DNA of 64,000 bases, taken from positions 20,026,001 through 20,090,000 of the forward strand of contig CM106585.1 in assembly GCA_048013815.1 (NCBI GenBank), read 5' to 3'. Made by a program: the position numbers and the translations under genes. Each line of letters opens with the position of its first letter. The stretch's first letter is position 1. A model generated the notes under the pieces. That model did not search any database and had not been told where the DNA came from. It saw only the letters and a list, made by a program, of their open reading frames with translations. Origin of the DNA: Setoptus koraiensis (lineage: Eukaryota > Animalia > Arthropoda). Of the stretch, positions 1,290 to 53,059 are shown in pieces.

Positions 1290-1900
1290 ATATTGATCGT
1301 AATCAGATTGCATCCCTCTTCAAGTAGTAACAGACAGACTTGGTTTGCAGACGGCTCACTTTTACTATGTTAGAGTTGCTCAAAGTTGAACGCAGCAAAA
1401 TAATGCTATGGATGGTATCGATATTGTCGAGCTTATTTGCCAGTCCGTATGATTTGTAAATTGGACAAGGTGTCTTTATCGTAATCAGATTGCATCTCGT
1501 TGAGTGGTGGAGGCCGAACTTGAGTGCGGGCGGCACATTTTATTCTATTAATGTTGTGGATGGTGCCAATGTTGTCGAGCTTATTTGCCAGTTTGTATGA
1601 TAGCTTGTGTGGATCGAGCAAGGTGTCTCTGTAGTTATCATGTTGCATCTAGTCAAGTATAGCAGAGGCCGAACTTGATTGGAGGCGTCTAAATCAATCT
1701 GTGCAAGTCAAAACTGCATAATGCTTCAGGATGGTAACCATATTGTCGAGCTTATTTGCCAGTCCTAACAAAGTTGTTGTATAATGGCACTACATAAGAC
1801 GGAGATTGCATAGCTATTATATCAATCTCTTTGTTGTTTATTTTATTTGTTAAGATACTATGATAACTTGGTGTAAATTGTAGATGCTTACACTCAGGAA
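1290..1900. repeat. Degenerate tandem repeat, unit about 150-170 bp, with an invariant 21-nt core TTGTCGAGCTTATTTGCCAGT
   Basis: Core is identical at 1424-1444, 1572-1592 and 1743-1763, and inverted at 6215-6235. Secondary shared motifs are GGCCGAACTTGA, CAAGGTGTCT and TTGCATC. Confidence 0.8.
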
Positions 1901-1949
1901 ATTGCATCAATATCACTAGATAGCCTATCTGACAACATAACAACGTCTA

Positions 1950-2759
1950 TTACACAATAGATAAGTGGTAAAATAAGGTGCCTGCGGACACACGTACAAG
2001 AATAGATTTTTCATCTAGATCGTGTTCCCATTCAATCGAAGACCATTTCTCTGTTTGAAACATTGTTTCCAATCTAGACAACGATACAGCTGGCTCAACA
2101 CGGAGATGTCGTTCAGCTAGACTAGCGGCCAATATAAACGATTTGAGATTTTCTGTCATGAATTTCAATCCAACTAAGGGCCATCTCTTGAGCGTTGCAA
2201 GATGCCTACTGAGATTGTTTCGTGTGATGGCTGGCAGAGGTTCAGGTATGGTGAGACTACCATGTTCAAGAGGGATTGGGCACTTGTAATTTTGTTCGAA
2301 CCAACTAATAACAGGGCTCCATTCTCGGTGTTGCATTTGAGACAATTCCTCGGGTTCGTCCGTACGAAATCTCAACGTATCAAACTGTAAATACTCCAAT
2401 ATAGAATCTATGAGTTCTGATTGTGTCTCATTGAATGGATTATCAATGGCGGTATTGGCGAGTGTGGTGGCGTGCATACATGTCAGGTCTATCTTGTCTT
2501 CAGTTTGGGCCTTCCATTCATTGGCTATAATGTGGGCCAGTGTTTCGTCCGGTACAGCCAACAGATTGCCAAGTGGTGTTTTGACATTTCTATTATTGAA
2601 TTTTATGGTGTAGTGGCGATCATCGTCTGTTTTTCCAATGGATATGTGTCTAGGTTTTTTGAGGACGGCTGCAGCCGTTGTTACAATGGTTCTCGTCGAT
2701 GCTCGCCCTCTTGGCCTCAACAACACGCCTCGTAATAATAATCGTGAGGACAAAGACAT
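1950..2759 (-). CDS. ATPAF2: ATP synthase mitochondrial F1 complex assembly factor 2 (ATP12), copy A, intronless, 269 aa
   Basis: Arg-rich mitochondrial-type leader, then ATP12 motifs VKTPLGNLLAVPDETLAHIIANEW, CMHATTLANTAID, QHREWSPVISWF and LSRLETMFQTEKWSSIEWEHDLD. Confidence 0.93.
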   Translation of the reverse strand: MSLSSRLLLRGVLLRPRGRASTRTIVTTAAAVLKKPRHISIGKTDDDRHYTIKFNNRNVKTPLGNLLAVPDETLAHIIANEWKAQTEDKIDLTCMHATTLANTAIDNPFNETQSELIDSILEYLQFDTLRFRTDEPEELSQMQHREWSPVISWFEQNYKCPIPLEHGSLTIPEPLPAITRNNLSRHLATLKRWPLVGLKFMTENLKSFILAASLAERHLRVEPAVSLSRLETMFQTEKWSSIEWEHDLDEKSILVRVSAGTLFYHLSIV

Positions 2760-3161
2760 GACTAGAGAAGTATAAGTGCTTGCGATGCGATATTTGATCA
2801 GACTCTGGTCTCTGATAGACGTAAATGTGCCAGAGCCTCAGATTCAGAGGATCGCTTCGACTAAAAGAACACATGTAAAAACAATAATTCAATCTGTTAG
2901 TGAGGCGCGCGCAATTCGAACCAAAATAAACGATATTTTCGTTAAACGGTGTCTGGTTACGGTATCGCAGCAATGAGAGAGAAAGACGGAGAAACATTCT
3001 GTGGGTTTTATTTCAGCAAGGCAGTGATGCCTTGAATGACTTTATTTTGGTCATTGTTTATTTGTCATTGTGCGTACATTTAGCTGATAGCTGTTGATAT
3101 AATAGCTGTTGCTGCCAGATGTTGGAGGTGTGAGATGCATCTCGTGAGATCCAGGCTGCAT

Positions 3162-3498
3162 CTAGAGGAAGTAAAAGACAGTCGAGGCTCCGGAGGCGAC
3201 CATGAACCTGTGTGATTACAAGAGTGGGCAAGATTTGGTTAATTAGTTAATTGGTGCTATTCATCGCTAATTGTTGGTTGGTGGTGGGCTCACAGCAAGT
3301 GACTTACCATAAGAGGTTGCTTGCCGTTTCCAAACTGGCTGCACCCGATTTCACCGTAGTACCGGGCATAGATGATGAGTTGGTTGCAGCGGTGACACTA
3401 GCAGCCGGCATAGGAGTAGTGGTATCGGCGGCGGCGACGAAAGTCAGTGCTACCGAGAGCAACAGAGCGACCAAGATGAGCTTGTTGTATTTAGCCAT
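3162..3498 (-). CDS. Secreted Ser/Thr/Pro-rich micro-protein with predicted GPI signal, copy A (78 aa); join(3498..3308,3207..3162)
   Basis: Signal peptide MAKYNKLILVALLLSVALTFVAAA. A 100-bp GTAAGT...CACACAG phase-2 intron restores ...KSGAASLETASNLLW|FMVASGASTVFYFL*, i.e. small residues, a polar spacer and a hydrophobic tail. Contains an N-S-S sequon. Confidence 0.75.
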
Positions 3499-3799
3499 TA
3501 TTTCTGCTATTTTGTGTTGTTAAATTTATTGAATTATATTTATTTTCGATTGGTGTTCGATTGAGGCGATAATGAGTGCGAATTGTCGAGCGATGCGATG
3601 ACGACTGATCGGTTTGGAGTGCCGATCGTCGCCCGGACAGTTGCTGTTGCTGGCTGTTGCCAGCCGTTGCACACACACGAAGTCGCGCGTGCGCTCAATT
3701 GTCGGGCGCCTCAGATTTCGGTCAGTTTAGCAACGCTCTAATTGATACCGTCAATGCGACTTGAGCGACTCAACGCAATGCACATTGCACTCAAAATGC

Positions 3800-4184
3800 T
3801 GAGCGTTGGCGCCTTGATCGGTCGTGACTCGTCGATAGTGCGGCTCAAATCGCGCTCAAATGTCGGCCTTTCCACACACTTCCGGTTGGCAACAGGTCAG
3901 ACGAGTTGCAAGATGCAACAATCACAATAACAATTACACTGACTGCTTGCCCTATAATGCAAACGGCACAGGCGGCGGCGTATTGCAGCGAGCAATCGCA
4001 ACTTTTGTTCCGGTTTGCATACGGGGCAACATGTGCGTTACTAAATGTCACTAGCATGTGACATTTGCAATTGTTAATAATGCGAGCGTGCTCTACAAAA
4101 TGGCGCCCACCATTCGTCTGATCCGTATGCAATTGAGTCGATCCGATCGTTTTTGAGACCTGCGATAGTCGGACGCCAACGCCT
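3800..4184. promoter_or_regulatory. Unique spacer between the divergently oriented arms; probable shared upstream regulatory region
   Basis: Lies between the 5' ends of the two micro-protein genes. Contains a perfect 9-bp inverted repeat AAATGTCAC-tagcat-GTGACATTT (4043-4066) and a CAAAATGGCG YY1/Pho-like motif near 4097. Confidence 0.45.
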
Positions 4185-4499
4185 GCATTTTGAGTGCAAT
4201 GTGCATTGCGTTGAGTCGCTCAAGTCGCATTGACGGTATCAATTAGAGCGTTGCTAAACTGACCGAAATCTGAGGAGCCCGACAATTGAGCGCGCACGCG
4301 CGACTCCGTGTGTGTGCAACGGCTGGCAACAGCCAGCAACAGCAACTGTCCGGGCGACGATCGGCACTCAAGGCCAAACCTATCAGTCGTCATTACATCG
4401 CTCGACAGTTCACACTCATCATCTCTTCAATCGAAAATAAATATCTCCAAATTAATCAACCAAAATTATCAAACTACAACACAAAGTTAAACGGAAATA

Positions 4500-4833
4500 A
4501 TGGCTAGATACAACAAGCTCATCTTGGTCGCACTGTTGCTCGCGGTGGCACTGACTCTCGTCGCTGCCGATACCACTACTCCTATACCGGCTGGTACGTC
4601 TTCAGGAACTCCTGGTACTGCCACACCATCGACACCCAAGCCGAAATCGGGTGCAGCCAGTTTGGAAACGGCAAGCAACCTCTTATGGTAAGTCACGTGC
4701 TGTGAGCCCACCACCAACCAACAATTAGCGATGAATAGCACCAATTAACTAATTAACCAAATCTTGCCCACTCTTGTAATCACACAGGTTCATGGTCGCC
4801 TCCGGAGCCTCGACTGTCTTTTACTTCCTCTAG
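4500..4833 (+). CDS. Secreted Ser/Thr/Pro-rich micro-protein with predicted GPI signal, copy B (77 aa); join(4500..4687,4788..4833)
   Basis: MARYNKLILVALLLAVALTLVAADTTTPIPAGTSSGTPGTATPSTPKPKSGAASLETASNLLW|FMVASGASTVFYFL*. Intron 4688-4787 (GTAAGT...CACACAG), AATAAA near 4949 and 4984. Confidence 0.75.
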
Positions 4834-5229
4834 ATGCAGCCTGGATTTCCCGAGATGGATCTCACACCGCCAACATCTGGCAGCAACAGCTATTATATCA
4901 ACAGCTATCAGCTAAATGTACGCACAATGTCATACAAACAATGAACAAAATAAAGCCAATTCAAGGCATCACTGCCTTGCTGAAATAAAACCCACAGAAT
5001 GTTTCTCCGTCTTTCTCTCTTTTTGCTGCGACACCGTAACCAGTCACCGTTTAACGAAAATATCGTTAATTTTGGTTCGAACTGCGCGCTCCTCACTAAC
5101 AGATCGAATTATTGTTTTTACATGTGTTCTTTTAGACACTGCGGTCCTCTGAATCAGAACCTCTCACACATTTACATCTATCAGAGACCAGAGTCTGATC
5201 AATTATTGCATCGCAGTACTTCTCTAGTC

Positions 5230-6039
5230 ATGTCTTTGTCCTCACGATTATTATTACGAGGCGTGTTGTTGAGGCCAAGAGGGCGAGCATCGACGAGAAC
5301 CATTGTAACAACGGCAGCAGCCGTCCTCAAAAAACCTAGACACATATCCATTGGAAAAACAGACGATGATCGCCACTACACCATAAAATTCAATAATAGA
5401 AATGTCAAAACACCACTTGGCAATCTGTTGGCTGTACCGGACGAGACACTGGCCCACATTATAGCCAATGAATGGAAGGCCCAAACTGAAGACAAGATAG
5501 ACCTGACATGTATGCACACCACCACACTCGCCAATACCGCCATTGATAATCCATTCAATGAGACACAATCAGAACTCATAGATTCTATATTGGAGTATTT
5601 ACAGTTTGATACGTTGAGATTTCGTACGGACGAACCCGAGGAATTGTCTCAAATGCAACACCGAGAATGGAGCCCTGTTATTAGTTGGTTCGAACAAAAT
5701 TACAAGTGCCCAATCCCTCTTGAACATGGTAGTCTCACCATACCTGAACCTCTGCCAGCCATCACACGAAACAATCTCAGTAGGCATCTTGCAACGCTCA
5801 AGAGATGGCCCTTAGTTGGATTGAAATTCATGACAGAAAATCTCAAATCGTTTATATTGGCCGCTAGTCTAGCTGAACGACATCTCCGTGTTGAGCCAGC
5901 TGTATCGTTGTCTAGATTAGAAACATTGTTTCAAACAGAGAAATGGTCTTCGATTGAATGGGAACACGATCTAGATGAAAAATCTATTCTTGTACGTGTG
6001 TCCGCAGGCACCTTATTTTACCACTTATCTATTGTGTAA
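5230..6039 (+). CDS. ATPAF2: ATP synthase mitochondrial F1 complex assembly factor 2 (ATP12), copy B, intronless, 269 aa
   Basis: Same protein as copy A except two residues (HATT/HTTT and ETMF/ETLF). The ATG at 5230 corresponds to copy A's start. Confidence 0.93.
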   Translation: MSLSSRLLLRGVLLRPRGRASTRTIVTTAAAVLKKPRHISIGKTDDDRHYTIKFNNRNVKTPLGNLLAVPDETLAHIIANEWKAQTEDKIDLTCMHTTTLANTAIDNPFNETQSELIDSILEYLQFDTLRFRTDEPEELSQMQHREWSPVISWFEQNYKCPIPLEHGSLTIPEPLPAITRNNLSRHLATLKRWPLVGLKFMTENLKSFILAASLAERHLRVEPAVSLSRLETLFQTEKWSSIEWEHDLDEKSILVRVSAGTLFYHLSIV

Positions 6040-6299
6040 TAGACGTTGTTATGTTGTCAGATAGGCTATCTAGTGATATTGATGCAATTTCCTGAGTGTA
6101 AGCATCTACGATTTATACCAAGATATCATAATATTTCATCACATAAATTAAACAACAGATAGCCATGCATTCTTCGTCTCACTCGTAGTGCCGTCATACA
6201 ATAACATCATTTGGACTGGCAAATAAGCTCGACAATATGGTTACCATCCCAAAGCCATATGTTGTTTTGGCTTCCACAGACTAATTGTGACGCCTCCGA

Positions 6300-6546
6300 T
6301 CATGTCTGGCTGCTGCTAGATGAAGGAAGCCATTTCAGTCATATGCCAGTGTCGGAAAATTGGCTGCATCTGGTCTGGATTCTGTAAGCAGCTTTGCATG
6401 GTGTGCAACCTGTTGCTTTTCGAAGAGCCCGGCACTAATTAACAATTAACGCTAATCAACCAACCTTAAAATCACTACTCTCTACGCTTTCCCCCAAGTT
6501 CATAATCGCCTCCGGATGCTCGAGTGGCTGGCCACTTGATGTGTGA
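6300..6546 (+). pseudogene. Decayed third paralog of the GPI-type micro-protein gene
   Basis: 6357-6402 matches the end of exon 1 at 31/46 nt without gaps (KLAASGLDSVSSFAW vs KSGAASLETASNLLW). A 97-bp intron-like segment has its acceptor AG mutated to AA (6496-6497), followed by exon-2-like FIIASGCSS. There is an in-frame TGA upstream and no signal peptide. Downstream similarity (CAAGGCATCA, GCTGAAATAAAA) extends to about 6710. Confidence 0.65.
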
Positions 6547-11317: not shown

Positions 11318-14300
11318 CTTGAATTGTTGTTGCGTAATCGCGCCAGAAGCAAGCGATCCTGTGGCAGACACATTAGAGTGGATTAGCCGGATTGAGCACT
11401 GACAATACTTGTGAGTGAGTGGCCATACAATACGCACAATATACAATAATCCCATTTGTTGGTCGCGACACTGTCTCTCTCTCTCTCCGGCCACACACTG
11501 ATAATCGTCGGCTTGACCACTCGAGTTGTCTCTGATATTCTCTCATATTTGCATCTCATCCGCTCGCCACTCGGCTCATGCCGGCCAGCCAACAGCGCCA
11601 TCCATGCAACAAGTGCTGGCTGCCCGGCGATGCCGGCCGACAATTGTCGGCCGGAATTGTGGCGCAATTTTAAAATTCGAGCCAATTGGCTAATGGAAGC
11701 GGGCGGCCCCGTTCTTGCGGCCGCATACCTACAATTGCGATTCGGCGGCGCATAATTCGCATGGGCGCATAATTCCGAGCGCATTTCCACTTTTGGCGAG
11801 CTCTTGCTTGTGCGTTCTCGACTCGAGAATATCGAGCGCTTTCTCGCCGCTCGCTCGCTCGCCCGACCGAGCGGCCGGCAGCGAAAGAGTTGCTGCCGGC
11901 CGCTCGGTTGCTGGTCCAACGGCAGCCCTCATCTTCATTGCTGTGCCGCGGCCGGAGCCGACGAAGCCGACGAAGCCAAAGAATCGCGAAGAATCGCGAA
12001 GCAGCGCACACAAGCCAACGACTCGGAGCCGCTCAAATCGGAGCCGGCTCGACTCGGAGTGGCTCGAATGGAGCCGCTTCGGTCGCGGGCTGCCCCCGCT
12101 CGAAGCGGCGACCCTCGGCAGCGGGCAGCGGACAGCAGCAACAAAGAGAACAACGAGATTTTGAATCTATATCGTTGCCGGACAAGCGCGCCAAACCAGT
12201 TAAGCGCTCTAATGGAGGCAAGCGGGCAACTCGTTTGCCGTTGTTGCAATTGCGCAACAATGGCAACTTGTGGCGAGCCCTTTAGTTTCTAGTTTTGTTG
12301 GCCGCCGGTTATAGTTTAGTTTGGCCGGTTGCGCGGATGTCGCTGTTGGCGTTGTTGTTGGCTGCTTGCGCGGTATAGTTTGGAGTGTTCAAGTGGTTGC
12401 CGTTGTTGCCGACCTGGCGTCAACAACAACAACGGCGGCAGCGACGGCAACAACGGCAACGACGGCAACAACAACGGCAACAACGACGCAACAACAAAAA
12501 CGACGGCAACAACGGCAACAACGACGCAACAACGACAGCAACAACAAAGAGCGCTCGCCATTATGATTATTATGGTCATCTTCGCCGGCATAAAGTATTG
12601 ATGTGATTGAAAATTGGACCTTGCCGGCGCCACTGGCCGCACTAATAAGTAATAGCAGCATACACTAATAAGTAATAGCAGCAGATACCAATGAGTAATA
12701 GTAGGGCACACGGTGCCGAGCGTTCGGACGGCGCCCGAGAGCGGCCAGCGTCGGTCAGTCGGCCGTTCGGACGCTCGGACGCTCGGACGCTCGGACGCTC
12801 GGACAGGTAGAGGGACGGACGCAACAATGAGCAAGACACATTAACATAATCAGATTGGTCATTTAATGAGCATTTTTCAAACGAGAGACCGGTCGCCACG
12901 GTTAGGCCGGCGCGGCTGGCATGCCAGTCGCGCAAATTGGCCCTCTTTGGCTCTTTGGCTCTGTCGCTGTCGCGCTCTCTCGTTATTTCGAGTGGCCAGT
13001 TTACCTGGGCCGCTCGCCCGAGCGTCCGCCGGCGCGGCTCACCTGAGCCGATGCCCGGTCGGCCGCGGCTCAGCTGATGGTGCCACTCCGCTCACTGACA
13101 ATATGCCCCTTGCGTCGCGCTCTTGCGTAACTCGCATACCGTGCGGATATGATTGACCGCTCTCCGCTTTCTGCTCTCTGCTGTCGCTGCGCCACCGCTC
13201 TGGCGCTCTCCGGCGCTCGCTGCCGGTCGCCGCGCTACGGGTCTGCGCCATCCGCCGGGTATGCGCCGTCGGCCGGGTATGCGCCGTCCGACGCGACGGG
13301 CCGGCAGCAACGGCACAAATGGCAACAACGGCAACAACGGCAACAGCGGCAACGACGGCGGCAGCGCAACAATGAGCACACAACCCGGCCAATGATTATC
13401 ATCGCGAGCGGCCATGAGAGTGGACAGAGAGCCGCTGAGAGAGAGACAGACCGATCTAGTCTAGTCACACACTTTTCGTTGCGTAATCGCGGCGGGCAGA
13501 GTGGCGCTCGGCGCGACGGGCCGGGCCGACAAATTGAGGAAGCGCCGACTCGGCGCGCTCGGTCGCTCGCCGAAGGTCTCCTCATTCTAATTTATATATT
13601 CTATTAGAGAGAAAACAATTCAATTTATTAGACCAATTAGACGGTACCGGCCCGGCGCAAGTGACGGCCCGGCGCAAATGACGGCCCGACGCAAGTGACG
13701 GCCGCGCCGGCCGCGACCGTCGCAAATGCCATTGTGGTCGTTTGTCAGTTGTGTCCATTGTGACGCTCACACACTCGCACTGTGTGCTCTTTATCTGGCC
13801 GCCATCTTGTAATTGTTTCAAATTGATTGAATTAGTACACACTCTGTCGGCTGGCCCACAATTTGCGTCGCAATTGGAATCGCATGTCCACTCAAACTTG
13901 GCTGATTGCGCAATGTTGCGCTGTTGCGCAATGTTGCGCTCGGGCCGGCCCGAAGACCACGTTACGCACACACTCACTGCACATCGCATACACAACCGGC
14001 CAAGACGGCGCTAAACAGCAGCATTAGCAGCGCAAACACACCGTTGCGTCACACAGGTGAGTGGTCAGCAGCACAGGCAATCGCGAAACGCGGACAGGTA
14101 AGGCTCAGGTGAGCGACAGGTAAGCGACAGGTACGGCACCGGCCAGCGCCACGCACTCACTGGACAGCGTCTCACTGGACAGTGTCTCACTGGACAGTGT
14201 CCGTGCGCTGGCTGCGGCCGCCGACGGGCCAGTGGGCACTGTCCAGCGCGGCCGATGGACACAGTTCGGCACGGCCAATGGACACTGTCCGGCACTGTTG

Positions 14301-16740
14301 AGCAACCGGTGACGAGAACGCAGCGACAGACGGTAAATAATTTGGCGCAAGTTCTCACATGCGCTCGACGCGCAATTGCACGCCAGTTGGCACTTGCGGC
14401 CGTGAGTTTGCGCGGCGCAGCCGCGCCCGAGCCGCGCCGAGTGCCGCGTCGGGTGACCTTCGCCGCTTCGACCGACCGCCTTCCCGCGAGCACCGTCCAC
14501 TGATCGCCGTCCACTGATCGCTGCCCACCGATCACTGCCCACTCATCACTGTCCACGCGGCGCTCTGGCCACCGTCCGAGCGGTCCGCCGGCCGGCCCGC
14601 CGACTCCCGGCCGGAAGGCCGGAGGTGGGCAGAGCGGGCAGCGGACTCCGCGGCCGGCGGGCAGAGAGCGCGAGCGTAATTAGGCAGGCAACCAATTGGA
14701 CGGTCCAGTTTCGCCAGCCAGTGGCGCGTCCGAGCAACAAGCTGGCCCCCTCGCGGTCGCTCAATGAGCGCTCATTAACTGGCCGGCCTGTCGCTGGGCA
14801 GCGAACGACATAGCAAAGATATGACATAATCTGACATGTGACCGTCGCTTCGCTTGCCTTCACTTTGCGATGATTAAAAATTATGTCGGCCGTTGGGGCT
14901 CCTTCGTCACACGGGCGCGCCGTGAGCGAGCGCAACGACACCGCGGCTCATGTCGCTCGCCGGCCGCCAATGGAGGCAAGGTCAGCGCGTCGCGGCTCAA
15001 GGCCGCCGCGTGCGAACGCACGGGGGGCCGCCGCCTATCAATTAGAGCACTCGGTCTCGCTCTGGCCGCCCTAATCCTGCCCCCATCATGCCGCGTTATA
15101 TCATGACTCGTTACGTCATGACTCGTTATATGTGTGCCGCTCTGACAGCGTGTATGTTACCGGCCCGGCCGGGGGCGCCGCCTCCGTTGGCGCGGCGCGT
15201 TGCGCCTCGCGTGACCGGGCGCGCTCGAACCGAACGCGGACCGAGCCCGGCCAAGCGCGATCCGGCGCAACCGGGCCGGCCGCGCGCTGCCCGATTATTT
15301 CACTCGCCTCGCTGTCTCGTCGAGTTCGCGTCGCGTCGAGTTCGCGTCTCGTCGTTCGCCATCGTCGGGCGTCGGCACGATTTTTGCACGTAGCACGCGC
15401 AAACACGGACACGGCCATTCTCGCCAGCGCTGTCACGTGTTCTGGCGCGCACTTTCAAGTTGAAAGTTGCAAGTTGAAAGTTTCAATTAGAAAGTTTCAA
15501 CGAAAGCGGGCGAGCCGGCGGGTGAGGCCCGCTGCAAATTTGTCCAATCGCACATTGTAATATCTCACCCGATACCGAGCTCGGTGGGCGCGCGCCTGTG
15601 GCACGCGCAGGGGGCAGAGAAAGAGGCGCCAGTTTCAAAGTTTCGCGAGCGACAAAATTCGAGGCTGCGCGAGCGACGAAATTCGAAGCCGCGCGAGTGA
15701 CCAAGATCAATTCTGTGGGAGAATGTCGCCCGTTCCGAGCGCTCGATGGGAGGCGGCTCGTTGCGGCCAGTTGCGGCTGAGGGGCCAGCCGCACGCGGCG
15801 ACGCGCTGGTGACTCACAGGTGAGCTGGTGACTCACAGGTGAGCTGGTGACTTACAGGTGAGCTGGCGAGTGTTGCGCAACGACCTGTGATGTGTCGGCC
15901 GTTGGCAGCCCGAGCACGATATGGCAATTGACGGACGGCGTCTCGCACATTGCGAGCGCTCCATTTGAGAGCGACTCGCCGAGAGCTGGTGTGGCCCGCT
16001 GTCGATAGGGCGCGTCAATGAGCCGAGCGACGGGCGGTCTTGGCAAACCATTGAGTGAGCGTCAGATGCGCATGCTGTGGCCGTATGCATATCGCTTCGT
16101 GTTACACTTGTTGCAAGCGGACTGTTTATGGGCAGCATAGGTGTTACTATTAGCACACTGTTACATAACGAGTCGCACCTGATTCACCTGTCCATTGTGG
16201 CGAGCGATCGCACATTAAATGATGGTGCCAAATCGCTGTAGCAAATAGTGCAAATAGTGACGTAATGGCGCCACAAGCGCCCGTCGTCGCGTCGATGCTG
16301 GCCGCAGAATCGTTCGCTCCAACGATCAAATGGCCGAGTGGTCAAACGGCCAAATGGCGCGTGATTCGTTGATTTGATAACTGCCGGCGACCGCCAGCGG
16401 CCGGCGATCGGCAGCGGCCGGCGACCGGCAACAATGCCCCACCGACAACGCTCACCCAGCGCTGTCACGGACGGCGGCCACTGACGGCCGCACCGACACT
16501 GACCAATAGCTAACAGGGCGCAACAGGTTGACGGCGTCACACGATCTACCTGTTGCCGCGGCGCGCCGCATGCAGCGCCGGACATAGCGCCCCTGGCGCA
16601 GTCGTGTTGCGCTCGGCCAAACTGTTGCCACAGTTTGTTGGCGTCTCGCCAGCGCATATATCACACTCTTACGCAATACATTATATAACAAATGTTGTGT
16701 GTTATGTAACGTGAGCGCAATATTAACAGTGCAAGGCCTA

Positions 16741-16836
16741 TATGCATTGCGATATGTATCACGATATGCATTGCGATATGCATTGCGATATGTATCGCGA
16801 TATGCAGTGCGATATGTATCGCGATGTGTATTGCAG
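16741..16836. repeat. 8 x 12-bp tandem array TATGYATYGCGA
   Basis: Units tatgcattgcga, tatgtatcacga and tatgtatcgcga, in register from 16741. Confidence 0.9.
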
Positions 16837-17360
16837 CGCACGACGCGTGAATTTCAACGCTGGAAACAAAATCAAAGCACCACTGACACTTGTCCGTCAG
16901 CTGACTGACCACACAGGCCAACGAAGCCTGTAAGTAGATCAGCTGGGCTTGCGATCGCTCGCTGGCGCGCACTGACACTGTCGGCCCGCAATTTGCATAT
17001 GCAAATTAGCACCGCATTAGCTCATGCCGCATATTATTGCGTAATACACATTACAACATATTAGGTGCATATATCATTGCGCATTTTATATTGTGTGCCG
17101 AGTGTGTGTGTGTGTGTGTGTGTGCGAGAGCATCACCGAGGCGTGATGCTTCGAACCGAATGCCTCGGCGTCCCAGCGTCTCAATGCCTCAGCGTCTCAA
17201 CGTCCGAATGTCTCAACATCTCAGCGTCAGAATGTCTGAATGGCCGAATGGTAATTGACTGGACTAAATATTCGGCTGAGTGTCGGCCATTTATTGGCCC
17301 GTTCGGCCGTCGGTTTGGCGGGCGCGAACCTGCGCCGGCATCGGCCCAAGTTGGCAGAAA

Positions 17361-17510
17361 TCAGCTGATGCTGGCCGGAGTCAGCTGATGCTGGCCGAAA
17401 TCAGCTGATGTTGGCTGATATCGGCCGAAATCGGCCGATATCAGGCGACCACCTAATATCAGCCGATAGTCGGGCAGGCCAATATCGGCCTGATATCGGC
17501 CAGATATCGG
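17361..17510. repeat. 3 x 20-bp repeat with TCAGCTGA E-box, followed by a perfect 14-bp inverted repeat and GATATCGGCC stutters
   Basis: tcagctgatgctggccg.. at 17361, 17381 and 17401; CTGATATCGGCCGA-aa-TCGGCCGATATCAG at 17415-17444. Confidence 0.9.
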
Positions 17511-20500
17511 CGCAGTCGAACGAATGAATCATGAATGAATTGCGTCGGATCGCGGAATTGATTGGTCGGAATCAATTCATCGAATCGAATTCAATTCAGC
17601 TTTCGATGTGAATCGATCGCGACCGGCGATTAAAACAATGTACAAACATCAGCATTTATTGGGCTGCCCAACAAGCCCAACAAGCCCGACAAGCCCGACA
17701 AGCCCAATGGGTCGGCTTGTATCGGCCCGACAACAATATAAACGATAATAATGCCTCACAATATCCGCCGTTGACTGTTTGTGGCATCGCTTCGACGGGC
17801 CATCTATAATAGATAAATAACTAATAACTATAATAGATAAATAGCAGTAGTTAAGCGTATTATAGTGACGGGCTCGGTCGAATTGCAGCGACTTTTGCCG
17901 GGCGGCCGCGACGCGAGGGCAACAAGTGCAGCGACGCTGCCTAGTGATGATTTAATCACTATTTAATTTAACGACCCGAGCGACCCGAGCGGCTCACAGC
18001 GATGAGCGGCCGAGTGAGCCGCTTATCCCGGCCGGCCGGCGCTTGCGATCGCCCGCACAGTTGGTGGGCTCTCGTTGGCCGTTGGCCGGCGGGCCAGTTA
18101 CACATTCGAATTACACATCTGAATTACACATCTGAATTACACATTTGAATGATATTAAAACAACACTTAGCCAACAACAACCGCGCCAGCGGCAGCCCGA
18201 CACCGAGCTCGCTCACAACAAGCCGGCGACGCGGTTTAATTGTTGCCGCCGTTCAACTGTATCACGGCTCGGCTCGGACGGCCGCTCGACGCTCACCTGA
18301 ATCCTCGCACGGCCGCCAGGTGAGCCGCTCAGGTGAATCGTGGACGCTCGGGTGTTCGCTCAGGTGACCGACGCGGCTAATACGATAGACGATGCCAACA
18401 ATGCGCCGGCGACACAACAAAGAATCGTTCTGTATATATGATATATATTGCGGCGTTCGTGTCGGCCGACGGCGGCCATAAACTATCTCACACACGAATA
18501 TCAAATCAAGCGCCGGACTTAATTAACGACTGGCAACTTGTTGCTCGCATTGTTCTCTAGCCGGCCCGAGCCACGTTTATCCACGAGTTTATCCGCTGGA
18601 ATGTGCGCCGCTACCGGCGCTCAGGCCGCCGACTAACCGCCGGCCGGCCGGCCGGCCGAAAGTCGCTGCAATGGCGGCCTGAGCGCCGCAGGAATTTGAA
18701 TGAATTTTAATGAATTGCGCGCCTGATCCTAATTGACCCGAGCGGCCCGGCGAGCGCAGGCGGACCGCGTCGGGAGCGACCACTGGCCGAGACAGCTCAA
18801 TTACGCACATTGGCACACATACGCACAGTGACAGGCACACTGCGCCGAGCAGCGACACGCAGATCAACTGAAATTGTTGCTGAAATTGTTGTCACAACAA
18901 TTGTGCTCCTCGGACAGGTGCCCTGCTCGCCGCGCCCGGATCTGTCACCCGGCCCGCGCACCCGTCCGCCCAGCGAGCGCCGCCGAGGCGCGCCCGACCC
19001 GTGCCCGGTGCTGTGGCCCCGGCTGCGGGCAGCGTCTCGCCGACGGTCCGACTCTCGAGCCGCTTCCGGTTTCGGACGGGTTGCATCCGGTGTGTGCAGA
19101 TTGTGCCCCCGTTTGCCCGTGTGACTCACAATCTATGAGCACGCAAATTGTTGAGCGCATCTGCACGCTGCTCGCGCAAGTTCATCCCGTCATCGGGTCT
19201 GTCGTCGGCCCGAGAATCTCGGCCAGCGGTTTGTTGTGGCCGCTTTATCAGGGCCCGCTGGTTCGAAATTAGAACGAGACACTAGATGCGCTCAACGGGC
19301 GGGTGCGGCGGTTTGCGTCGGGCGCACTAGCAATCAAACTAATGCAACATCGACGGGACACAGGTAATGGCAGCATCGCGTCGCGGCACCAGTTTCTCTT
19401 GTCGTGCTCGCGACCGTTATCTGTTTGCCGGCCGGCCGGCCGGCGCTTTTCACCTGCGCGCCCCGCGTTGCAACTGCCAGTGCCACCGGACACGCCGCTC
19501 GGCCGTTCGGTCGTTCGGTCTTTTGGCCGAACGGAGGCGAACCGGCCAAACTGGCCGCTAGCCGGCCAAGCGACTGACCCGAGCACCAGCAAAGAGCGGC
19601 CCGAGCACCTGCAATAAGCGGCCCGTGCGACCAGCGAGGAGCGACTTGTGCGCGCCCCGCAAACGAGAGCGCGGCCCAGTTGAGGAAATGGGGCCGTCAG
19701 TCGGGCCTCGGGCCGCCGCCCGCTGCCGGTGGCTGCGAGCGGCCACTTGTGGCCGGCAACCTGCGCGCCGACGCACGCCGACGCACGCCGAAGGAGCCAG
19801 AGCCGATCGAGTGGCCGACTTGATGCGCACGGGATGGCCGCTCGATGCGCCCAAGTCGCCGGATGCGCACAAGTTGCCGTCACAAGTGAGCGCCCATTTT
19901 TCACCTGCGCCCCTCGCTGTTGATTATTATGTGCGCTCCCGTTGGGCCGGCTCGGCCCGCTGTCTGGCGCGTCGTCCCGCAGAGGGCACTGGAACGGCCG
20001 CACGAGAGGCCGGCGAAGTGGCCGCGCGAGAGGCTAAAGCAGCGGCCGCAACGAGGGCACCCGAGCAGCCGTTTCGCGGCGCCCGTTCCGGCGTCGCGCA
20101 ACAATTGCGACCGGATGGCCGGCGAGCCGACGAGATGCCGGCAGAAGCCGGGGCAAGCGACGAGCCGAGAAGCCGAGAAGCCAAGCAAAGAAGCCGCGAG
20201 AAGCGAGCGACTTAATTGAGCGGGCCTAATGGCGCGGCCGGCGAAGACAATGGTGGCGACCATCACGGCCGCAAGCCGAGCAAGGTGAGCAAAGTGAGCG
20301 AAATGAGCGAAGTGAGCGAAATGGCGAGTCCGCGCCGGCCAAAGTCCGATTCGCGGTCCGAGAATCTCGGAGCTTCGGGTTGGCAGTTTAGCGCCGCAGT
20401 TCGGCCAAACTGCCACTTGATTGACATTGTTCGGCCGGGCCGGCGAGCGGCGGCCAAATGCGTGACCGTCATGCGCTCCGCTGGCCGTGCGAGCGAGCGC

Positions 20501-23500
20501 ATAGTCGCAGTTCATAGCATCGCATAATCGGACGGCGCTCGCCGGGCGCGGATAATGAATATTTAATTAATAATTAAGATCAATTGTTGCTGTTATATTT
20601 ACCTTCGGCGCGCCGCAAAGCCCGAGTGGGCCAGCAAAGGTAAACATGAGGCAAATATAAGGTAAATCTGAGCCGATTCGATGTGGCCGCTCGCTACTGT
20701 CAGTGGCTACTGGCCGCGGCACTTGTCGCGCTTTTGCATGCACAGTGCATTTGGGCCGATTTGGCGCGCATTCGGGCCGATTTTCGGCCTGACTCGGGCC
20801 GGCCGATTTGAGCGATTTGAGCGCATCGAACGACCGTTGAGAATCGCATTACCGCCGGCGCTCAGGCGCCGGCGACGAGCTGGCCGCTCGAAGCGCAATA
20901 TTCGGCCGATTTCGGCCGATCGAGTGCGAGGGCGGCCGCTCGGCCGACGCGAAGCGTATCGCCGATTGCGTAACCAGAGTGCACACTCTGTCACGGGCCA
21001 GTCTGTGGCGTTTGCGGCGCCGACGGTCAGCCGACGGCCAGTCGATGCTCAGCCGACGGCCAGCTGATGCGCTCACCTGTTGCCGGCGCATTCGCAGTCT
21101 GCGAATTGCGGAGACGCTCGCCGGCGCATTCGCGGAGACGCTCGCCGGCCAGCGCCGGCAACGACGCAATGATTTGGGCCGAGATTTGTGGCGCGAAACG
21201 CAGCAGTCGACGAGCGGCGCTCGTCGAGCGAGTTGCTCGGCAAGTAAGTGCGCATTTAGGCGTGAATTTCGTCTGGGCGAACGGGCCGACTGCGGCCGTT
21301 TTGTTGTCGGTTTCGCGGCCGTTTTGTCGCGGTTTCGGCGCCGTTTCGCTGTCGGTTTTGCTGCCGTTTTGCCGTCGGTTTTGCTGCCGTTTTGTCGTCG
21401 GTTTTGTCGCGGCCGCTTCGCTGCCCGATCGGCGGCTGTGGGCGCCGCTACAATTATGCGCGCGAAATAATGCAACCGGCGGTCGGGTGTCACCTGGCCG
21501 GTCGGTCACAGTTGGCGGGCGGCCGGCAAGCGACAAACAACAATCGCCGAGCTAGTCTAATTATTCACTGTCACAATTGGCTTTGTGTTTCCTAATTGTG
21601 GCGCACGGCTAAGCTAATTAGCCGAGCGACTCTCACCTGTGCCCGGCTCACCTGTGCCCGGATCATCTGTGCCAGTCTCACCTGTGCCAGTTTCACCTGT
21701 GCCAGTCTTGCGATTGTTAGCTGAGTGAGCGTGCCAAATGAGTTACAGCGCCAGTCGCTCTGTTTGTCTTGCCTTGTTTGGCTGACACAACAGACACAAC
21801 AAAGGGCGAGAACGAGAACGTCGCAACTGGCGCACAGGTGAGTAGACTGGCACAGGCGAGAGTGGCACAGGCGAGAGTGGCACAGGTGAGAGTGGCTCAG
21901 GTGAGACTGGTGGCGCGAGAAAGGGTAGCGCCGGCAGAGGGCAGAGGCAATTTGTGTTGGGATATTTTCTGTTGGGCGCCAAGACCAGCCAAAGAAGGCG
22001 GCTCGCCCATTGGCGAGGCTCTCGCACTCTGTTGGGCTTGCCAACAGAGTGCGCTAAACAGACTGTGTGTCGGCGGGCAGAGTTGATTTCAAGTTCAACA
22101 CGCGCAACGCAGCGCCATGATGATGAATGCCGACTGACAATTCGACTTATTTGAATACAGTGTGAATTAGTTGTTCTCGTTACCTGTTCGAATCGAATGC
22201 GCATGCAACTACTGGTTCCGTTTGACCTTGAGCGCACACTCACTACCTGTTGTTACTTTTAGCTACTCACCTGTTAAACACACACACACACACAGCTTTG
22301 CAACCACTTGTTGTTGTTGTTGTGCTGCTGTCGTTGTTGTCGTTGTTGTTGTTGGTGTTGTTGTTAGTGTTGTCGTTGTTGCTGTCGTTGTTGTTGTTGG
22401 TGTTGTTGTTGTTGTCGAGCCAACTCTTTGCGCTTGCCACTCTCGCCGTGCTTTGTCTTTGTGTTGTCGACTTTGTTCTGTCGTCGTTGGCCCACTCTCG
22501 CACCGCAACCGCACACAATTGCATTGTCTGCCCGCTCAGGCATGTGTTAAATGTGCGCATATTGCACGTCGCGCACATTCAAGCCCCGGCTTATGCAGGC
22601 TGGAAAGCGCGGCGGCGCTGCTCGCTGTGCCGATTTGTCGTTGCGTTGCGAGCGCATTCGCAGAGAACGCCGAATCGCAGAGAACGCCGAATCGCAGAGA
22701 ACGCCGAATCGCCAGTCTTGCAGAGAATTGCGTTGCAGTTTTAGGCGCGATTTAGACGCGATTTTTGGACGCGATTTTCAGACGCGAATCTTGCACCAGA
22801 GAATTGCACTGCCAGACGGAGCCACTTGCCACCCACAACAAACGAGCAACCAACAACTTGCCAACAACTTGCCAACGACGGCCGACAGGTAGCGGCAAGC
22901 GGCAGCTAAAACAATGTGATAGCCGAGTATTTTGCATTATCATTTTGCACTCGACATATCGGTTTGCTCGGCTTTGTTTGCCACCAGTCGCAACAGCAAA
23001 TCGGCGCCGCTTACAATGTCGGCCGAACGCGCAAGCCAAATCAAGCGCGCCACCAGTCGGCGGGTGTGCATGACTGGCCGCCACTCCATTACGGTTACGT
23101 ATGGATCGCATTGTTATGTCGAGCCAACAGCCGCTGTCACCTGTCGCTGTTGTTGCTGTTGCTGTTGTTGCGACAACTACCTGTCGCTAACGGTGCCCGC
23201 TACTGTCAAGTGACTCAAGAATCTTGAGTCAAGATCGGCGCAGCGTGAGCAGCGTGCGCCGACATGGGCGACGTGCGAAACGTGAGCACCGCAGCACTGT
23301 TTGTGTTGCAGGGCGACAACAACAGGTTGGCAATTCGGCCAGTCTGTGCACAGGTGAGTGACCAATTCACAGGTGAGTGGCCAATTCGCAGGTGAGTTTG
23401 CGCCGCGCAAATCGGCGCAGATTTTCATCCGGATTGAGCTGTTGTTTGGGTTGCGCGGCCGAAGCGGGCTGACGGTCGCAGACGGTTCGCTGGCAAGACA

Positions 23501-46674: not shown

Positions 46675-48915
46675 ATGGAATCTCACAATGATGTCATCAG
46701 ATCTTTGAACGAGGACACATCCAGGTTCATCGCGGCAGGAGAGAAAATTGGCGACATCGAAGCGGCCGTTAGAGAACTCGTGGAAAATTCCATCGATGCA
46801 TTAGCCACGAAAATTGAGATACGTCTACGCGATTTTGGAACAAGTCTGATCGAGGTGGAAGATGATGGCGTTGGCGTCAAAGAATCAGACTTTGACAATC
46901 TAGCATCACGCTATTGCACATCAAAAATTTCAAATTTAGACAGCTTGAAAGCTCTTACAACTTTTGGATTTAGGGGTGAGGCTCTCAGTTGTCTGTGTGC
47001 CTCCGCCGATGTTACAATCGTCACTAGAAACAACGATGCACCTACTGGAACAAAGTTAGAATTTAATGAACGAGGACAGGTAAAAAAGAAAACTGTCACA
47101 GCACGAGATAGAGGTACAACTGTGAGCGTCAAACAACTATTCAAGCTAATGCCAGCCAGACGCAAGGATCTGGAGAAAAACGCCAAAAAACAATACGACA
47201 AAATAGTCAGATTAGTCCATGAGCATATTCTAGCTAGGCCACACATTAGATTTACATTGTGCAAATTAGATGGCATGAGAAAAGAGAAAGACTTTGTGCA
47301 TGGAGGCACAACGCTAGAAACTTGCCTCATTGGGATGTTTGGAATTAAAACTATGAATACACTAGTACCTTTTAAACAATCGATTGTAAAGAATGAAACG
47401 CAAAGTTCTCAGACATTCAAAACTTCTATAGCCAAATTCAAATATGACGACTCGGAGTCTGCCAATAAAAAAACTGCTGTTGATACGCCAATATTCCAAA
47501 TTTCCGGTTACATATCAAAATCCGATCTTTCATCAGGACGAAGCTCAAAAGATGGCCAGTATTTGTTCGTTAACAGAAAACCATGTGATCTACCCAAACT
47601 TAACAAGACTATTAACGAAGTGTACAAGAGTTATAATAAGAGTCAGTTCCCGTTCTTCTGTCTCTTCGTGACAGTGCAAGAATGGGCTGTTGACTTTAAC
47701 GTCCCAAGAAAGAGGGCTATTATACTAGTTAACGATAATGGTTTATGCGACATAGTGAAATCATCTTTAGATGGAATGTATGTAAGACCTAATCTTTCTA
47801 AAATAGGTGACATAGAGTCAAAAGCAAAAATGAGTTGTAGCCTTGTTGGATTAGAAAAGACAGAGGCACAAAAGTTTGTTGCGGAAGAGGATCCATCTGT
47901 AACCGATTGTCGGATCGCGATGGCGGAGGATGAACCATCTGCAACCGACCGTCGGATCGCCACAGCGAAATGTCCAGCTTCTTCAAACCCTGATTTCAAC
48001 GCGATAGCGGAAGAGGTACCAACTGCAACCGACCGCCGAATCGCCAAGGCGAAATGTCCGGCTTCTTCAAACCCTGATCTCAACGCAATAGCGCAGGATG
48101 AACCATCTGCAACCGACTGTCGGATCGCTACAGCGAAATGTCCTCCTTCTTCAAACCCTGATTTCAACGCGATAGCGGAAGAGGAACCACCTGCAACCGA
48201 CCGCCGAATCGCCAAGGCGAAATTTTCGGCTTCTATTAACCCCGACTTCAACGCGATAGCGGAAGATGAACTAAAAGCTAGTTTAAACAAGGATTCTTTT
48301 GAAAAGATGGTAATAATTGGACAATTCAACAAGGGATTCATCATAACTAAACTCGATGATCATTTATTTATCATAGATCAACATGCCAGCGACGAACGAT
48401 ATAATTATGAAGATCAATTATCTAACCCGCCGATTGTGAGGCAACCATTGGTTCACCCTAAACCTCTTTTTCTGAACTCAATGCAAGAGAAAATTCTTGA
48501 GGAGCACAAAGATCTATTTGAAAGAAAAGGATTTTCTTATAAGATTGACATGAACAAGTTGCCTGGAACTCGCGTTTCATTGACCTCCACTTCAATATGC
48601 AAAGGCACCAAGCACGATATTTATTTGGGCAAGGAGGATATTGAAGAATTAATAGGAGTTATATTGGAATCCCCCAATAGGGCAGAGGACTATACCTTAA
48701 CTAAAGTGGAAACATTATCCGCAAGCAGGGCCTGCCGCAAATCTGTAATGATTGGTTCTTCGCTGGATCACAACCAAATGAAGGAGATAGTGGTGAGAAT
48801 GGGCACATTGAAGAACCCTTGGATTTGCGCCCACGGCAGGCCCACTATTCGGCACCTATTTAATTCAAGCTGGCTGATCAAGGACGAAGCCAATCCGGCA
48901 GCACCGAGCGCTTGA
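46675..48915 (+). CDS. PMS2: Mismatch-repair endonuclease PMS2 (MutL-alpha subunit), intronless, 746 aa
   Basis: GHKL ATPase motifs ELVENSIDA and TFGFRGEALS. C-terminal IIGQFNKGFII, DQHASDERYNYE (DQHAx2Ex4E), SRACRKSVMIG and CAHGRPT. Confidence 0.96.
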   Translation: MESHNDVIRSLNEDTSRFIAAGEKIGDIEAAVRELVENSIDALATKIEIRLRDFGTSLIEVEDDGVGVKESDFDNLASRYCTSKISNLDSLKALTTFGFRGEALSCLCASADVTIVTRNNDAPTGTKLEFNERGQVKKKTVTARDRGTTVSVKQLFKLMPARRKDLEKNAKKQYDKIVRLVHEHILARPHIRFTLCKLDGMRKEKDFVHGGTTLETCLIGMFGIKTMNTLVPFKQSIVKNETQSSQTFKTSIAKFKYDDSESANKKTAVDTPIFQISGYISKSDLSSGRSSKDGQYLFVNRKPCDLPKLNKTINEVYKSYNKSQFPFFCLFVTVQEWAVDFNVPRKRAIILVNDNGLCDIVKSSLDGMYVRPNLSKIGDIESKAKMSCSLVGLEKTEAQKFVAEEDPSVTDCRIAMAEDEPSATDRRIATAKCPASSNPDFNAIAEEVPTATDRRIAKAKCPASSNPDLNAIAQDEPSATDCRIATAKCPPSSNPDFNAIAEEEPPATDRRIAKAKFSASINPDFNAIAEDELKASLNKDSFEKMVIIGQFNKGFIITKLDDHLFIIDQHASDERYNYEDQLSNPPIVRQPLVHPKPLFLNSMQEKILEEHKDLFERKGFSYKIDMNKLPGTRVSLTSTSICKGTKHDIYLGKEDIEELIGVILESPNRAEDYTLTKVETLSASRACRKSVMIGSSLDHNQMKEIVVRMGTLKNPWICAHGRPTIRHLFNSSWLIKDEANPAAPSA
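47881..48272 (+). repeat. In-frame 84-bp (28-aa) tandem repeat x4 plus partial units inside the PMS2 linker
   Basis: Units start at 47923, 48007, 48091 and 48175, e.g. AEDEPSATDRRIATAKCPASSNPDFNAI; a half unit at 47881 and AEDEL at 48259. Confidence 0.95.
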
Positions 48916-52999: not shown

Positions 53000-53059
53000 C
53001 GTCACGGCGACGAGCTCGCCTCTATGATGGCCACAATATATTGTTGAACGGGAGCCCCA

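What the first reader, a model, noticed from the sequence alone, without database searches (positions are those of the whole stretch)
3162..4833. Unannotated two-exon micro-protein family resembling CD24/CD52-type GPI-anchored glycopeptides
The ORF track ends these genes at a TAA inside the donor site. Splicing out the 100-bp GT-AG intron adds FMVASGASTVFYFL, completing signal peptide + about 27-aa S/T/P-rich core + small-residue omega region (KSGAAS) + hydrophobic tail. After both ends are removed, the mature product would be a roughly 27-residue, probably O-glycosylated surface peptide, the architecture of vertebrate CD24/CD52. I do not recognise a named arthropod equivalent, so this is the best candidate for an undescribed system here.
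Basis: partly seen in the sequence, partly recalled or inferred. Interest (0 to 1): 0.8.

Follow-up and report, generated by a model that had tools for sequence, protein, structure and literature searches.

The report
Paired orphan GPI-type micro-mucin genes
Two mirror-image copies of a tiny two-exon gene in a compact arthropod (probably mite) genome look built to make a sugar-coated, lipid-anchored surface peptide of about 27 residues, like vertebrate CD24, but they have no detectable relatives and their expression could not be tested.

Summary
Copy B (+, 4500-4833) and copy A (-, 3498-3162) each have an exon-1 ORF of 63 or 64 codons whose stop lies inside a GGTAAGT donor. A 100-nt GT-AG intron follows, and a 46-nt exon 2 adds 14 hydrophobic residues and a stop.

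The joined reading gives four parts in order:
- a signal peptide;
- a 27-residue Ser/Thr/Pro-rich core;
- a run of small residues (KSGAAS);
- a 17-residue uncharged tail that ends the protein, which is the textbook layout of a GPI-attachment signal.

The copies lie head-to-head in a 4.6-kb palindrome that also duplicates ATP12. Their DNA is 99-100% identical from the omega region through exon 2. The 17-codon core is no more alike than shuffled sequence, yet it keeps 8/17 Ser+Thr in the coding frame only, which argues for selection on the translated product.

No relatives were found by Pfam, the word search, a full HMMER scan of 1.84 billion proteins, metagenome scans or synteny. A protein language model places both copies nearest CD24 and plant arabinogalactan peptides. 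That is resemblance, not kinship.

Four RNA runs gave zero reads, probably because the organism is absent from them, so splicing and expression are untested.

Verdict: probably a real lineage-specific GPI-type micro-mucin pair, and a new variant of a known kind. The scan had not seen it on other DNA.

The parts
4500..4687 (+). Copy B exon 1: start codon in GAAATAATGG context, signal peptide (codons 1-23), mucin-like core, omega region KSGAAS, spacer, and the first residues of the tail
4688..4787 (+). Copy B intron, 100 nt, GTAAGT...CTAAT...CACAG; the stop codon of the unspliced ORF (TAA 4689-4691) lies inside the donor
4788..4833 (+). Copy B exon 2: completes Trp, adds 14 uncharged hydrophobic residues, then TAG
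3308..3498 (-). Copy A exon 1 (64 codons; one extra Ala codon in the signal peptide)
3208..3307 (-). Copy A intron, 100 nt, 99% identical to copy B's
3162..3207 (-). Copy A exon 2, identical to copy B's
4593..4643 (+). Copy B hypervariable 17-codon core of the mature peptide
3352..3402 (-). Copy A hypervariable 17-codon core (contains an N-S-S sequon)
4185..4369 (+). Conserved upstream block of copy B (97% identical to 3618-3799 of copy A), a candidate promoter; an Inr-like TCAGT follows at 4383
3618..3799 (-). Conserved upstream block of copy A; TCAGT at 3608
4949..4989 (+). Two AATAAA signals downstream of copy B (4949-4954, 4984-4989), before the ATP12 start at 5230
3007..3046 (-). Matching AATAAA signals downstream of copy A (3046-3041, 3012-3007)
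1660..6318 (.). Head-to-head palindrome holding both micro-genes and two intronless ATP12/ATPAF2 genes (1950-2759 minus, 5230-6039 plus), around a poorly matching centre at about 3800-4184

Best explanation
These are two paralogous, lineage-specific protein-coding genes. Each is transcribed outward from the centre of a palindrome and spliced once.

Proposed pathway for the 77/78-residue precursor:
1. It enters the ER through a classic N-terminal signal peptide, cleaved after V/A-A-A.
2. Its C-terminal 25-27 residues are exchanged for a GPI anchor at one of the small residues of KSGAAS.
3. The remaining peptide of about 27 residues is densely O-glycosylated. Copy A may also be N-glycosylated at its N-S-S sequon.

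The product would be a GPI-anchored micro-mucin, a minimal glycan carrier on a cell surface, working like CD24/CD52, plant AG peptides or trypanosome small mucins.

The peptide core seems to matter only for its composition, or is selected to differ between the copies, while gene conversion keeps everything around it identical. Because the unspliced ORF stops inside the donor, intron retention would give a soluble, anchorless form.

Shown: the sequence grammar, the paralogue pattern and the absence of relatives. Inferred: transcription, splicing, GPI transfer, glycosylation and the anchored/soluble switch.
For: Gene signals:
- The ORFs, the phase-2 intron and an identical exon 2 are present in both copies.
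- The full consensus intron pattern is unique to these two loci, with 0 expected by chance.

Protein features:
- n-region MA(R/K)YNK, a 16-residue h-region with mean Kyte-Doolittle 2.9-3.1, and small residues at -3/-1.
- A 27-residue core with 12 Ser+Thr in each copy and 6 (B) or 3 (A) Pro.
- Small omega candidates S-G-A-A-S, a polar spacer of 6-8 residues, and a 17-residue uncharged tail (mean KD 1.69) that ends the protein. The tail is too short and too weakly hydrophobic for a stable membrane helix, and no cytoplasmic residue follows it.

Evidence of translation-level selection:
- The 17-codon cores align no better than shuffles (p = 0.32; 29% ungapped identity).
- Both cores are exactly 51 nt and stay open. 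Both hold 8/17 Ser+Thr and 13-16/17 small or hydroxy residues in frame 0 only (shuffle p about 0.004-0.005 for Ser+Thr and below 0.0005 for the wider set in each copy).
- Codon position 2 matches most often (8/17).
- The only indel in the CDS is one whole codon.

Regulatory context:
- The same GAAATAATGG start context in both copies, an in-frame stop just upstream, a conserved upstream block, and paired AATAAA signals.

Resemblance:
- The nearest Atlas clusters by language-model features are CD24 (0.80 and 0.85) and arabinogalactan peptide 23 (0.81) for both copies, although the hydrophobic tail was not in the query.
Against: - There is no RNA evidence. Four RNA-seq runs gave 0 reads on 3990-5200. 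The tool calls this no test, and the species label is probably that of a host, but it is not support either.
- No homologue exists in any database searched, so there is no cross-species conservation.
- Two relatives carry no such gene next to ATP12.
- Identity of the intron and exon 2 between the copies reflects homogenisation, not constraint.
- No trained GPI or signal-peptide predictor was run, and the joined product was never searched.
- Atlas scores of 0.80-0.85 with 133-143 shared features are leads only.
Confidence: 0.5

Rival explanations
1. A secreted, not anchored, small mucin-like peptide. Either the intron is retained and the product ends at ...NLLW, or the hydrophobic end is only a pro-region. 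This could be a salivary, glue-like or coat peptide of a plant-feeding mite.
For: The unspliced ORF is complete and carries the signal peptide and the S/T/P core. The only Pfam similarity, well below threshold, is to the Drosophila New_glue secreted salivary family. More than half of the predicted secreted proteins of the eriophyoid Aculops lycopersici were absent from orthogroups in other species (PMC7738191).
Against: A consensus donor, branch site and acceptor lead in phase to 14 hydrophobic residues followed immediately by a stop, which is unlikely to arise without function. The omega-like KSGAAS run followed by a spacer has no role in a purely secreted peptide.
Confidence: 0.2
2. A membrane micro-protein held by its C-terminal hydrophobic segment without GPI exchange (a type I single-pass peptide).
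For: A 17-residue uncharged C-terminal stretch follows a signal peptide.
Against: The stretch is short and only moderately hydrophobic (mean KD 1.69, with an S-G-A-S-T run in its middle). It lacks flanking basic residues and any cytoplasmic tail, and small omega-type residues lie 7-11 positions ahead of it. Established GPI-signal rules fit better.
Confidence: 0.1
3. Not a gene: chance ORFs in the duplicated upstream region of ATP12, untranscribed or non-coding.
For: No RNA reads, no homologues and absence at the syntenic place in relatives. Short ORFs are common, and an antisense ORF of 85-90 codons overlaps each copy.
Against: Frame-specific retention of mucin-like composition and length across two unalignable cores. 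Whole-codon indel. Complete signal-peptide grammar, a consensus intron in phase with a GPI-type tail, and conserved start context and poly(A) signals.
Confidence: 0.15
4. A true, very diverged homologue of vertebrate CD24 or of plant AG peptides, by descent or by transfer from the host plant.
For: Nearest Atlas clusters by language-model features. Similar precursor length (from my own knowledge of CD24).
Against: No Pfam CD24 or AGP match even at E <= 1. No such hit in the HMMER scan of 1.84 billion proteins. Shared-feature counts of 133-143 are below the level typical of family members. Low-complexity signal/mucin/GPI grammar converges easily.
Confidence: 0.03

Closest known systems
CD24 (heat-stable antigen) and CD52, vertebrate GPI-anchored glycopeptides
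   Same: Precursor of about 60-80 residues made of a signal peptide, a very short Ser/Thr/Pro-rich glycosylated core and a GPI signal; the mature peptide is only a glycan carrier. Nearest Atlas cluster for copy A (0.85) and second nearest for copy B (0.80).
   Different: No sequence kinship (Pfam PF14984 not matched). Arthropod rather than chordate. Here the intron splits the GPI signal and the donor holds a stop. The two copies sit in a palindrome with a core that cannot be aligned.
Plant arabinogalactan (AG) peptides (AGP23-type, Pfam PF28140)
   Same: Signal peptide, a 10-17-residue Pro/Ala/Ser/Thr core and a GPI signal. Top Atlas cluster for copy B and second for copy A. Copy B is rich in Thr-Pro dipeptides.
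   Different: No Pfam match. AG peptides depend on plant prolyl hydroxylation and arabinogalactan addition, which an animal cell is not known to perform (my own knowledge).
Trypanosoma cruzi small GPI mucins (TcSMUG, TSSA)
   Same: Small polymorphic Thr-rich GPI-anchored surface peptides whose central region varies while the signal and GPI ends are conserved (PMC2193624 and PMC5568413, titles and abstracts).
   Different: Protist multigene families with many members. Here there are two copies in an animal, with no sequence similarity tested or expected.
LuloG, midgut mucin-like glycoprotein of the sand fly Lutzomyia longipalpis
   Same: An arthropod O-glycosylated mucin-like protein that the authors report as GPI-anchored on gut epithelium (PMC4960694). 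It shows that this kind of surface molecule exists in arthropods.
   Different: A predicted 19-kDa protein described as Ser/Thr-rich in its terminal part, so several times larger than a 27-residue peptide. Not compared by sequence here.
Drosophila New glue proteins (Pfam PF21827)
   Same: Small secreted Thr-rich proteins. This is the only Pfam profile with any score (16.2 and 12.8 bits).
   Different: Far below the 31-bit cut-off. The match covers the signal peptide and low-complexity Thr/Pro text. New glue proteins are not known to have a GPI tail (my own knowledge).

Membership tests
GPI-anchored proteins (general class) | N-terminal ER signal peptide | tested here: met
   Basic n-region, 16-residue h-region with mean KD 2.9-3.1, and small residues at -3/-1 before Asp in both copies. 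This is a rule-based check; no trained predictor was run.
GPI-anchored proteins (general class) | Omega site with small residues at omega and omega+2, then a polar spacer of about 5-10 residues | tested here: met
   S-G-A-A-S followed by a spacer of 6-8 residues containing Glu, Thr, Ser and Asn; identical in both copies.
GPI-anchored proteins (general class) | Uncharged hydrophobic stretch of 10-20 residues that ends the protein | tested here: inconclusive
   17 residues with mean KD 1.69 and nothing after them. This holds only if the 100-nt intron is spliced, and splicing could not be observed.
GPI-anchored proteins (general class) | Experimental anchor: PI-PLC release or detergent partitioning | not testable with these tools
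   Bench experiment.
Mucin-type O-glycoproteins | Ser/Thr/Pro-rich region that is actually O-glycosylated | tested here: inconclusive
   Composition is met: 12 of 27 residues are Ser+Thr in each copy, with 6 (B) or 3 (A) Pro, and the frame-specific enrichment has p about 0.005. Glycosylation itself cannot be tested here.
CD24 family (Pfam PF14984) | Match to the family profile | tested here: not met
   No hit at E <= 1 for either exon-1 product. Atlas feature scores of 0.80/0.85 with 135/143 shared features are below the level typical of members.
Arabinogalactan peptides (Pfam PF28140 / PF27998) | Match to the family profile | tested here: not met
   No hit at E <= 1, assuming this Pfam copy holds those models. 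Atlas scores of 0.78-0.81 are leads only.
New glue family (Pfam PF21827) | Score at or above the gathering cut-off of 31 bits | tested here: not met
   16.2 bits (copy B) and 12.8 bits (copy A).

The most novel reading that the evidence does not exclude
An arthropod has independently invented a CD24-like GPI glycopeptide and keeps it as a two-gene palindrome. In this reading, gene conversion homogenises the signal peptide, GPI signal, intron and UTRs, while a 17-codon cassette encoding the exposed peptide is kept different by diversifying selection or cassette replacement. The stop-in-donor intron, retained in an otherwise intron-poor genome, switches the product between a lipid-anchored and a secreted form. 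Such a molecule would probably act at a recognition interface such as mite-plant, mite-microbe or gamete.
Probability: 0.15. Interest if true: 0.65.

Novelty: new variant of a known kind. Interest (0 to 1): 0.4.

Why it matters
Very small GPI-anchored glycopeptides are known from vertebrates (CD24, CD52), plants (AG peptides) and trypanosomes, and I found no arthropod counterpart of this size. Homology-based annotation of streamlined mite genomes would miss such a gene. If it is real, it adds an independent origin of this minimal glycan-carrier design. It would also be a compact case for studying how a palindrome keeps the ends of a gene identical while its exposed core diverges completely. 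It would be a candidate surface or secreted molecule in a plant-manipulating mite lineage whose effectors are unknown. If it is not expressed, it is merely a well-formed orphan ORF pair.

Tried and rejected
RNA evidence:
- Four poly(A)/oligo-dT raw-read runs carrying the species label of several DNA holders gave 0 reads over 3990-5200. I treat this as no test, because the organism is probably not in those runs.

Exact look-ups:
- Copy A's ATP12 protein and copy B's exon-1 product are not on record.

Homology searches:
- Pfam gave only sub-threshold New_glue.
- The word search on exon 1 of copy B found nothing.
- A full HMMER profile search gave 7 hits. All are proteins of 373-691 residues. The two I inspected carry many copies of an ADTSTPIPGG-like repeat and look bacterial, so I rejected the hits as motif and low-complexity matches.
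- A back-translated scan of metagenome contigs and a degenerate exon-2 pattern scan found nothing.

Synteny:
- ATP12 relatives at 71%, 75% and 54% identity (L001-L003) carry no similar ORF. The neighbours annotated in L001 and L003 (L002 has none) are absent from this window.

Other negatives:
- Rfam found no RNA family in the window.
- Earlier notes of the scan showed no look-alike elsewhere.

Ideas rejected:
- An assembly fold-back artefact, because the arms differ in patches and enclose a centre that matches poorly.
- The core as a small inversion of its partner, because the reverse-complement alignment is worse than shuffles.
- A donor for either core elsewhere in the window: none found.
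- The ORF as a first exon of ATP12, because ATP12 has its own start and the same length as its relatives.

Full report
**What is in the sequence**

The region 3162-4833 holds two mirror-image copies of a very small gene.

| Feature | Copy B (+ strand) | Copy A (- strand) |
|---|---|---|
| Start codon | 4500 | 3498 |
| Exon 1 | 4500-4687 | 3498-3308 |
| Intron (100 nt) | 4688-4787 | 3307-3208 |
| Exon 2 (46 nt) | 4788-4833 | 3207-3162 |

- Copy B's unspliced ORF of 63 codons ends at TAA 4689-4691, which is part of the donor G|GTAAGT.
- The intron has a CTAAT branch-like site about 35 nt before the acceptor and ends in CACAG.
- Exon 2 starts in phase 2, completes a Trp codon and reads FMVASGASTVFYFL followed by TAG. 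The other two frames after the acceptor give unrelated hydrophilic text.
- The combined pattern GGTAAGT / CTAAY / YAG|G occurs only at these two places in the 64-kb window, and in none of 100 shuffles.
- The start codons share the context GAAATAATGG, each preceded by an in-frame stop.
- An Inr-like TCAGT lies about 110-117 nt upstream of each start.
- Two AATAAA signals follow each gene before the next gene starts.

There are only two copies in the window, so 'family' means a pair.

**The predicted product**

I analysed the two exon pieces separately and never submitted them joined.

- **Signal peptide.** The precursor begins with a basic n-region (MA-R/K-YNK) and a 16-residue hydrophobic core (mean Kyte-Doolittle 2.9-3.1). 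Small residues sit at -3 and -1 before an Asp.
- **Core.** 27 residues follow, 12 of them Ser or Thr in each copy. Copy B has 6 Pro and copy A has 3.
- **Omega region.** The run K-S-G-A-A-S comes next, then a polar spacer of 6-8 residues containing Glu, Thr, Ser and Asn.
- **Tail.** 17 uncharged residues (mean KD 1.69) are the last residues of the protein.

By the established rules for GPI attachment signals, this is a complete signal. The rules require small residues at omega and omega+2, a spacer of 5-10 residues, and a moderately hydrophobic tail with nothing after it. The tail is too short, too weakly hydrophobic and too bare of flanking charges to look like a stop-transfer membrane anchor. 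The mature peptide would be 27-29 residues long. Copy A's core also carries an N-S-S sequon.

This is a rule-based reading. No trained predictor was available.

**Evidence that the ORF is translated**

The two genes are the inner part of a head-to-head palindrome, about 1660-6318. It also duplicates an intronless ATP12/ATPAF2 gene (Pfam ATP12, E about 6e-31).

| Segment (copy B coordinates) | Identity to copy A |
|---|---|
| Upstream block 4185-4369 | 0.97 |
| 5'UTR-like stretch | 0.71 |
| Signal-peptide codons | 0.88 |
| Omega region and spacer | 1.00 |
| Intron | 0.99 |
| Exon 2 | 1.00 |
| 3'UTR | 0.94 |
| ATP12 | 0.99 |
| 17 codons at 4593-4643 vs 3402-3352 | 0.49 with gaps, 0.29 ungapped |

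- The alignment score of the two 17-codon cores lies inside the distribution for shuffled sequence (p = 0.32).
- Both cores are nevertheless exactly 51 nt and open.
- Both contain 8/17 Ser+Thr and 13-16/17 Ser/Thr/Pro/Gly/Ala in the coding frame, and not in the five other frames.
- Mononucleotide shuffles reach the Ser+Thr count in about 0.4-0.5% of trials for each copy, and the wider count in fewer than 0.05%.
- Matches are most frequent at codon position 2, as expected if NCN codons are selected.
- The only length difference in the CDS is one whole Ala codon.

Two sequences that have lost all nucleotide similarity but keep length, frame and a frame-specific mucin-like composition are best explained by selection on the translated peptide. 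Identity of the intron and exon 2 says nothing either way, because these parts are simply homogenised.

**Search for relatives**

- Pfam gives only a sub-threshold New_glue match (16.2 and 12.8 bits against a cut-off of 31). There is no CD24 or arabinogalactan-peptide hit at E <= 1.
- The word-indexed search of 5.8 billion proteins found nothing.
- A full HMMER search with a profile of both copies against 1.84 billion representatives returned seven hits. All are proteins of 373-691 residues. The two I inspected repeat an ADTSTPIPGG-type motif many times and look bacterial, so I treat the hits as spurious.
- Two scans of metagenome contigs found nothing.
- The nearest ATP12 proteins (75%, 71% and 54% identity, all on unnamed Logan contigs) were fetched with their flanks. 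No similar ORF is present. ATP12 there sits next to a CDP-alcohol phosphatidyltransferase gene that is absent from this window.

As far as these collections reach, the gene is restricted to this lineage. Short, fast-evolving two-exon genes are also easily missed by gene callers.

**Resemblance to known systems**

With only the exon-1 products as queries, the nearest Atlas clusters by language-model features are:
- copy B: arabinogalactan protein 23 (0.81) and CD24 (0.80);
- copy A: CD24 (0.85) and arabinogalactan peptides (0.79-0.81).

By the tool's own calibration these scores and shared-feature counts (133-143) are leads, not evidence of kinship. They do show that an independent method groups both diverged copies with the two classic classes of signal + tiny glyco-core + GPI-signal micro-proteins.

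In the literature, an arthropod GPI-anchored mucin-like protein exists (LuloG of a sand fly midgut, PMC4960694), but it is much larger, a predicted 19-kDa protein. Trypanosome small mucins such as TSSA share the conserved-ends, variable-centre pattern (PMC2193624 and PMC5568413). A search for invertebrate CD24/CD52 counterparts returned only vertebrate work.

**Expression**

This is the main gap.
- The look-up of sequencing runs listed DNA-type holders in five studies, and RNA raw-read runs that share only a species label with some holders.
- Laying four of those RNA runs from four studies on 3990-5200 gave zero reads in all bins. The tool marks this as no test.
- My stretch stopped just short of the ATP12 coding sequence, so I have no internal control.

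**Organism**

- Earlier notes of the scan call this a compact, intron-poor, mite-like genome in two pieces.
- Several long intronless animal ORFs in the window fit that: a MutL homologue, Rab40-like, NRF-domain and nuclear-receptor genes.
- A published two-chromosome, 34-Mb eriophyoid assembly was recovered as contamination of a tree genome and annotated only by homology (PMC11879100). It would fit the 'two pieces', the lack of annotation and the empty RNA runs.
- I did not verify that identity.
- In eriophyoids more than 80% of genes are intronless (PMC7738191, as cited in PMC11879100). A retained intron inside a 77-codon gene is therefore noteworthy. It suggests, without showing, that the splice/no-splice choice (anchored versus soluble) is used.

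**Verdict**

| Reading | Estimate |
|---|---|
| Real lineage-specific gene pair encoding GPI-anchored, O-glycosylated micro-mucins, with function carried by the glycan coat rather than the peptide sequence | about 0.5 |
| Secreted-only peptide | 0.2 |
| Chance ORF | 0.15 |
| Membrane-held, no GPI exchange | 0.1 |
| True CD24/AGP homology | 0.03 |

It works like CD24/CD52 and AG peptides, but it fails the sequence test of membership in each of those families.

All searches used the exon-1 pieces by reference, and exon 2 is too short for any protein tool.

Noticed in passing
window 1660-6318: Head-to-head palindrome duplicating ATP12/ATPAF2 (99% identical) together with the micro-gene. Arm identity is patchy, from 0.49 to 1.00, around a poorly matching centre at about 3800-4184. 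This looks like gene conversion with local escape.
   Followed up: partly
window 47806-49606 and 50700-52499: A second palindrome (arms about 1.8 kb, 97-99% identical, 1.09-kb spacer). It copies the 3' part of a MutL-family mismatch-repair gene (46675-48915) and leaves a stand-alone MutL_C ORF at 51391-51999 on the other strand.
   Followed up: no
window 53000-55799 and 57167-59954: Tandem duplication of about 4.16 kb (95-97% identical) carrying two 600-codon NRF-domain (nose-resistant-to-fluoxetine type) genes, each followed by a 270-codon ORF.
   Followed up: no
window 12000-22000: A GC-rich block (0.52-0.64) in a window that is otherwise 0.35-0.49 GC over most of its length. Overlapping ORFs on both strands around 19269-21493 gave no Pfam match for the one tested.
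   Followed up: no
L001 and L003 (relatives' ATP12 loci): In two relatives of different distance, ATP12 lies near a CDP-alcohol phosphatidyltransferase gene on the opposite strand (directly adjacent in L001). That neighbour is missing from this 64-kb window, so ATP12 has moved or its neighbourhood was rearranged in this lineage.
   Followed up: partly
window 4487-4744 (-) and 3251-3523 (+): Open antisense ORFs of 85 and 90 codons overlap each micro-gene. This is most simply a by-product of the NCN-rich sense codons.
   Followed up: no
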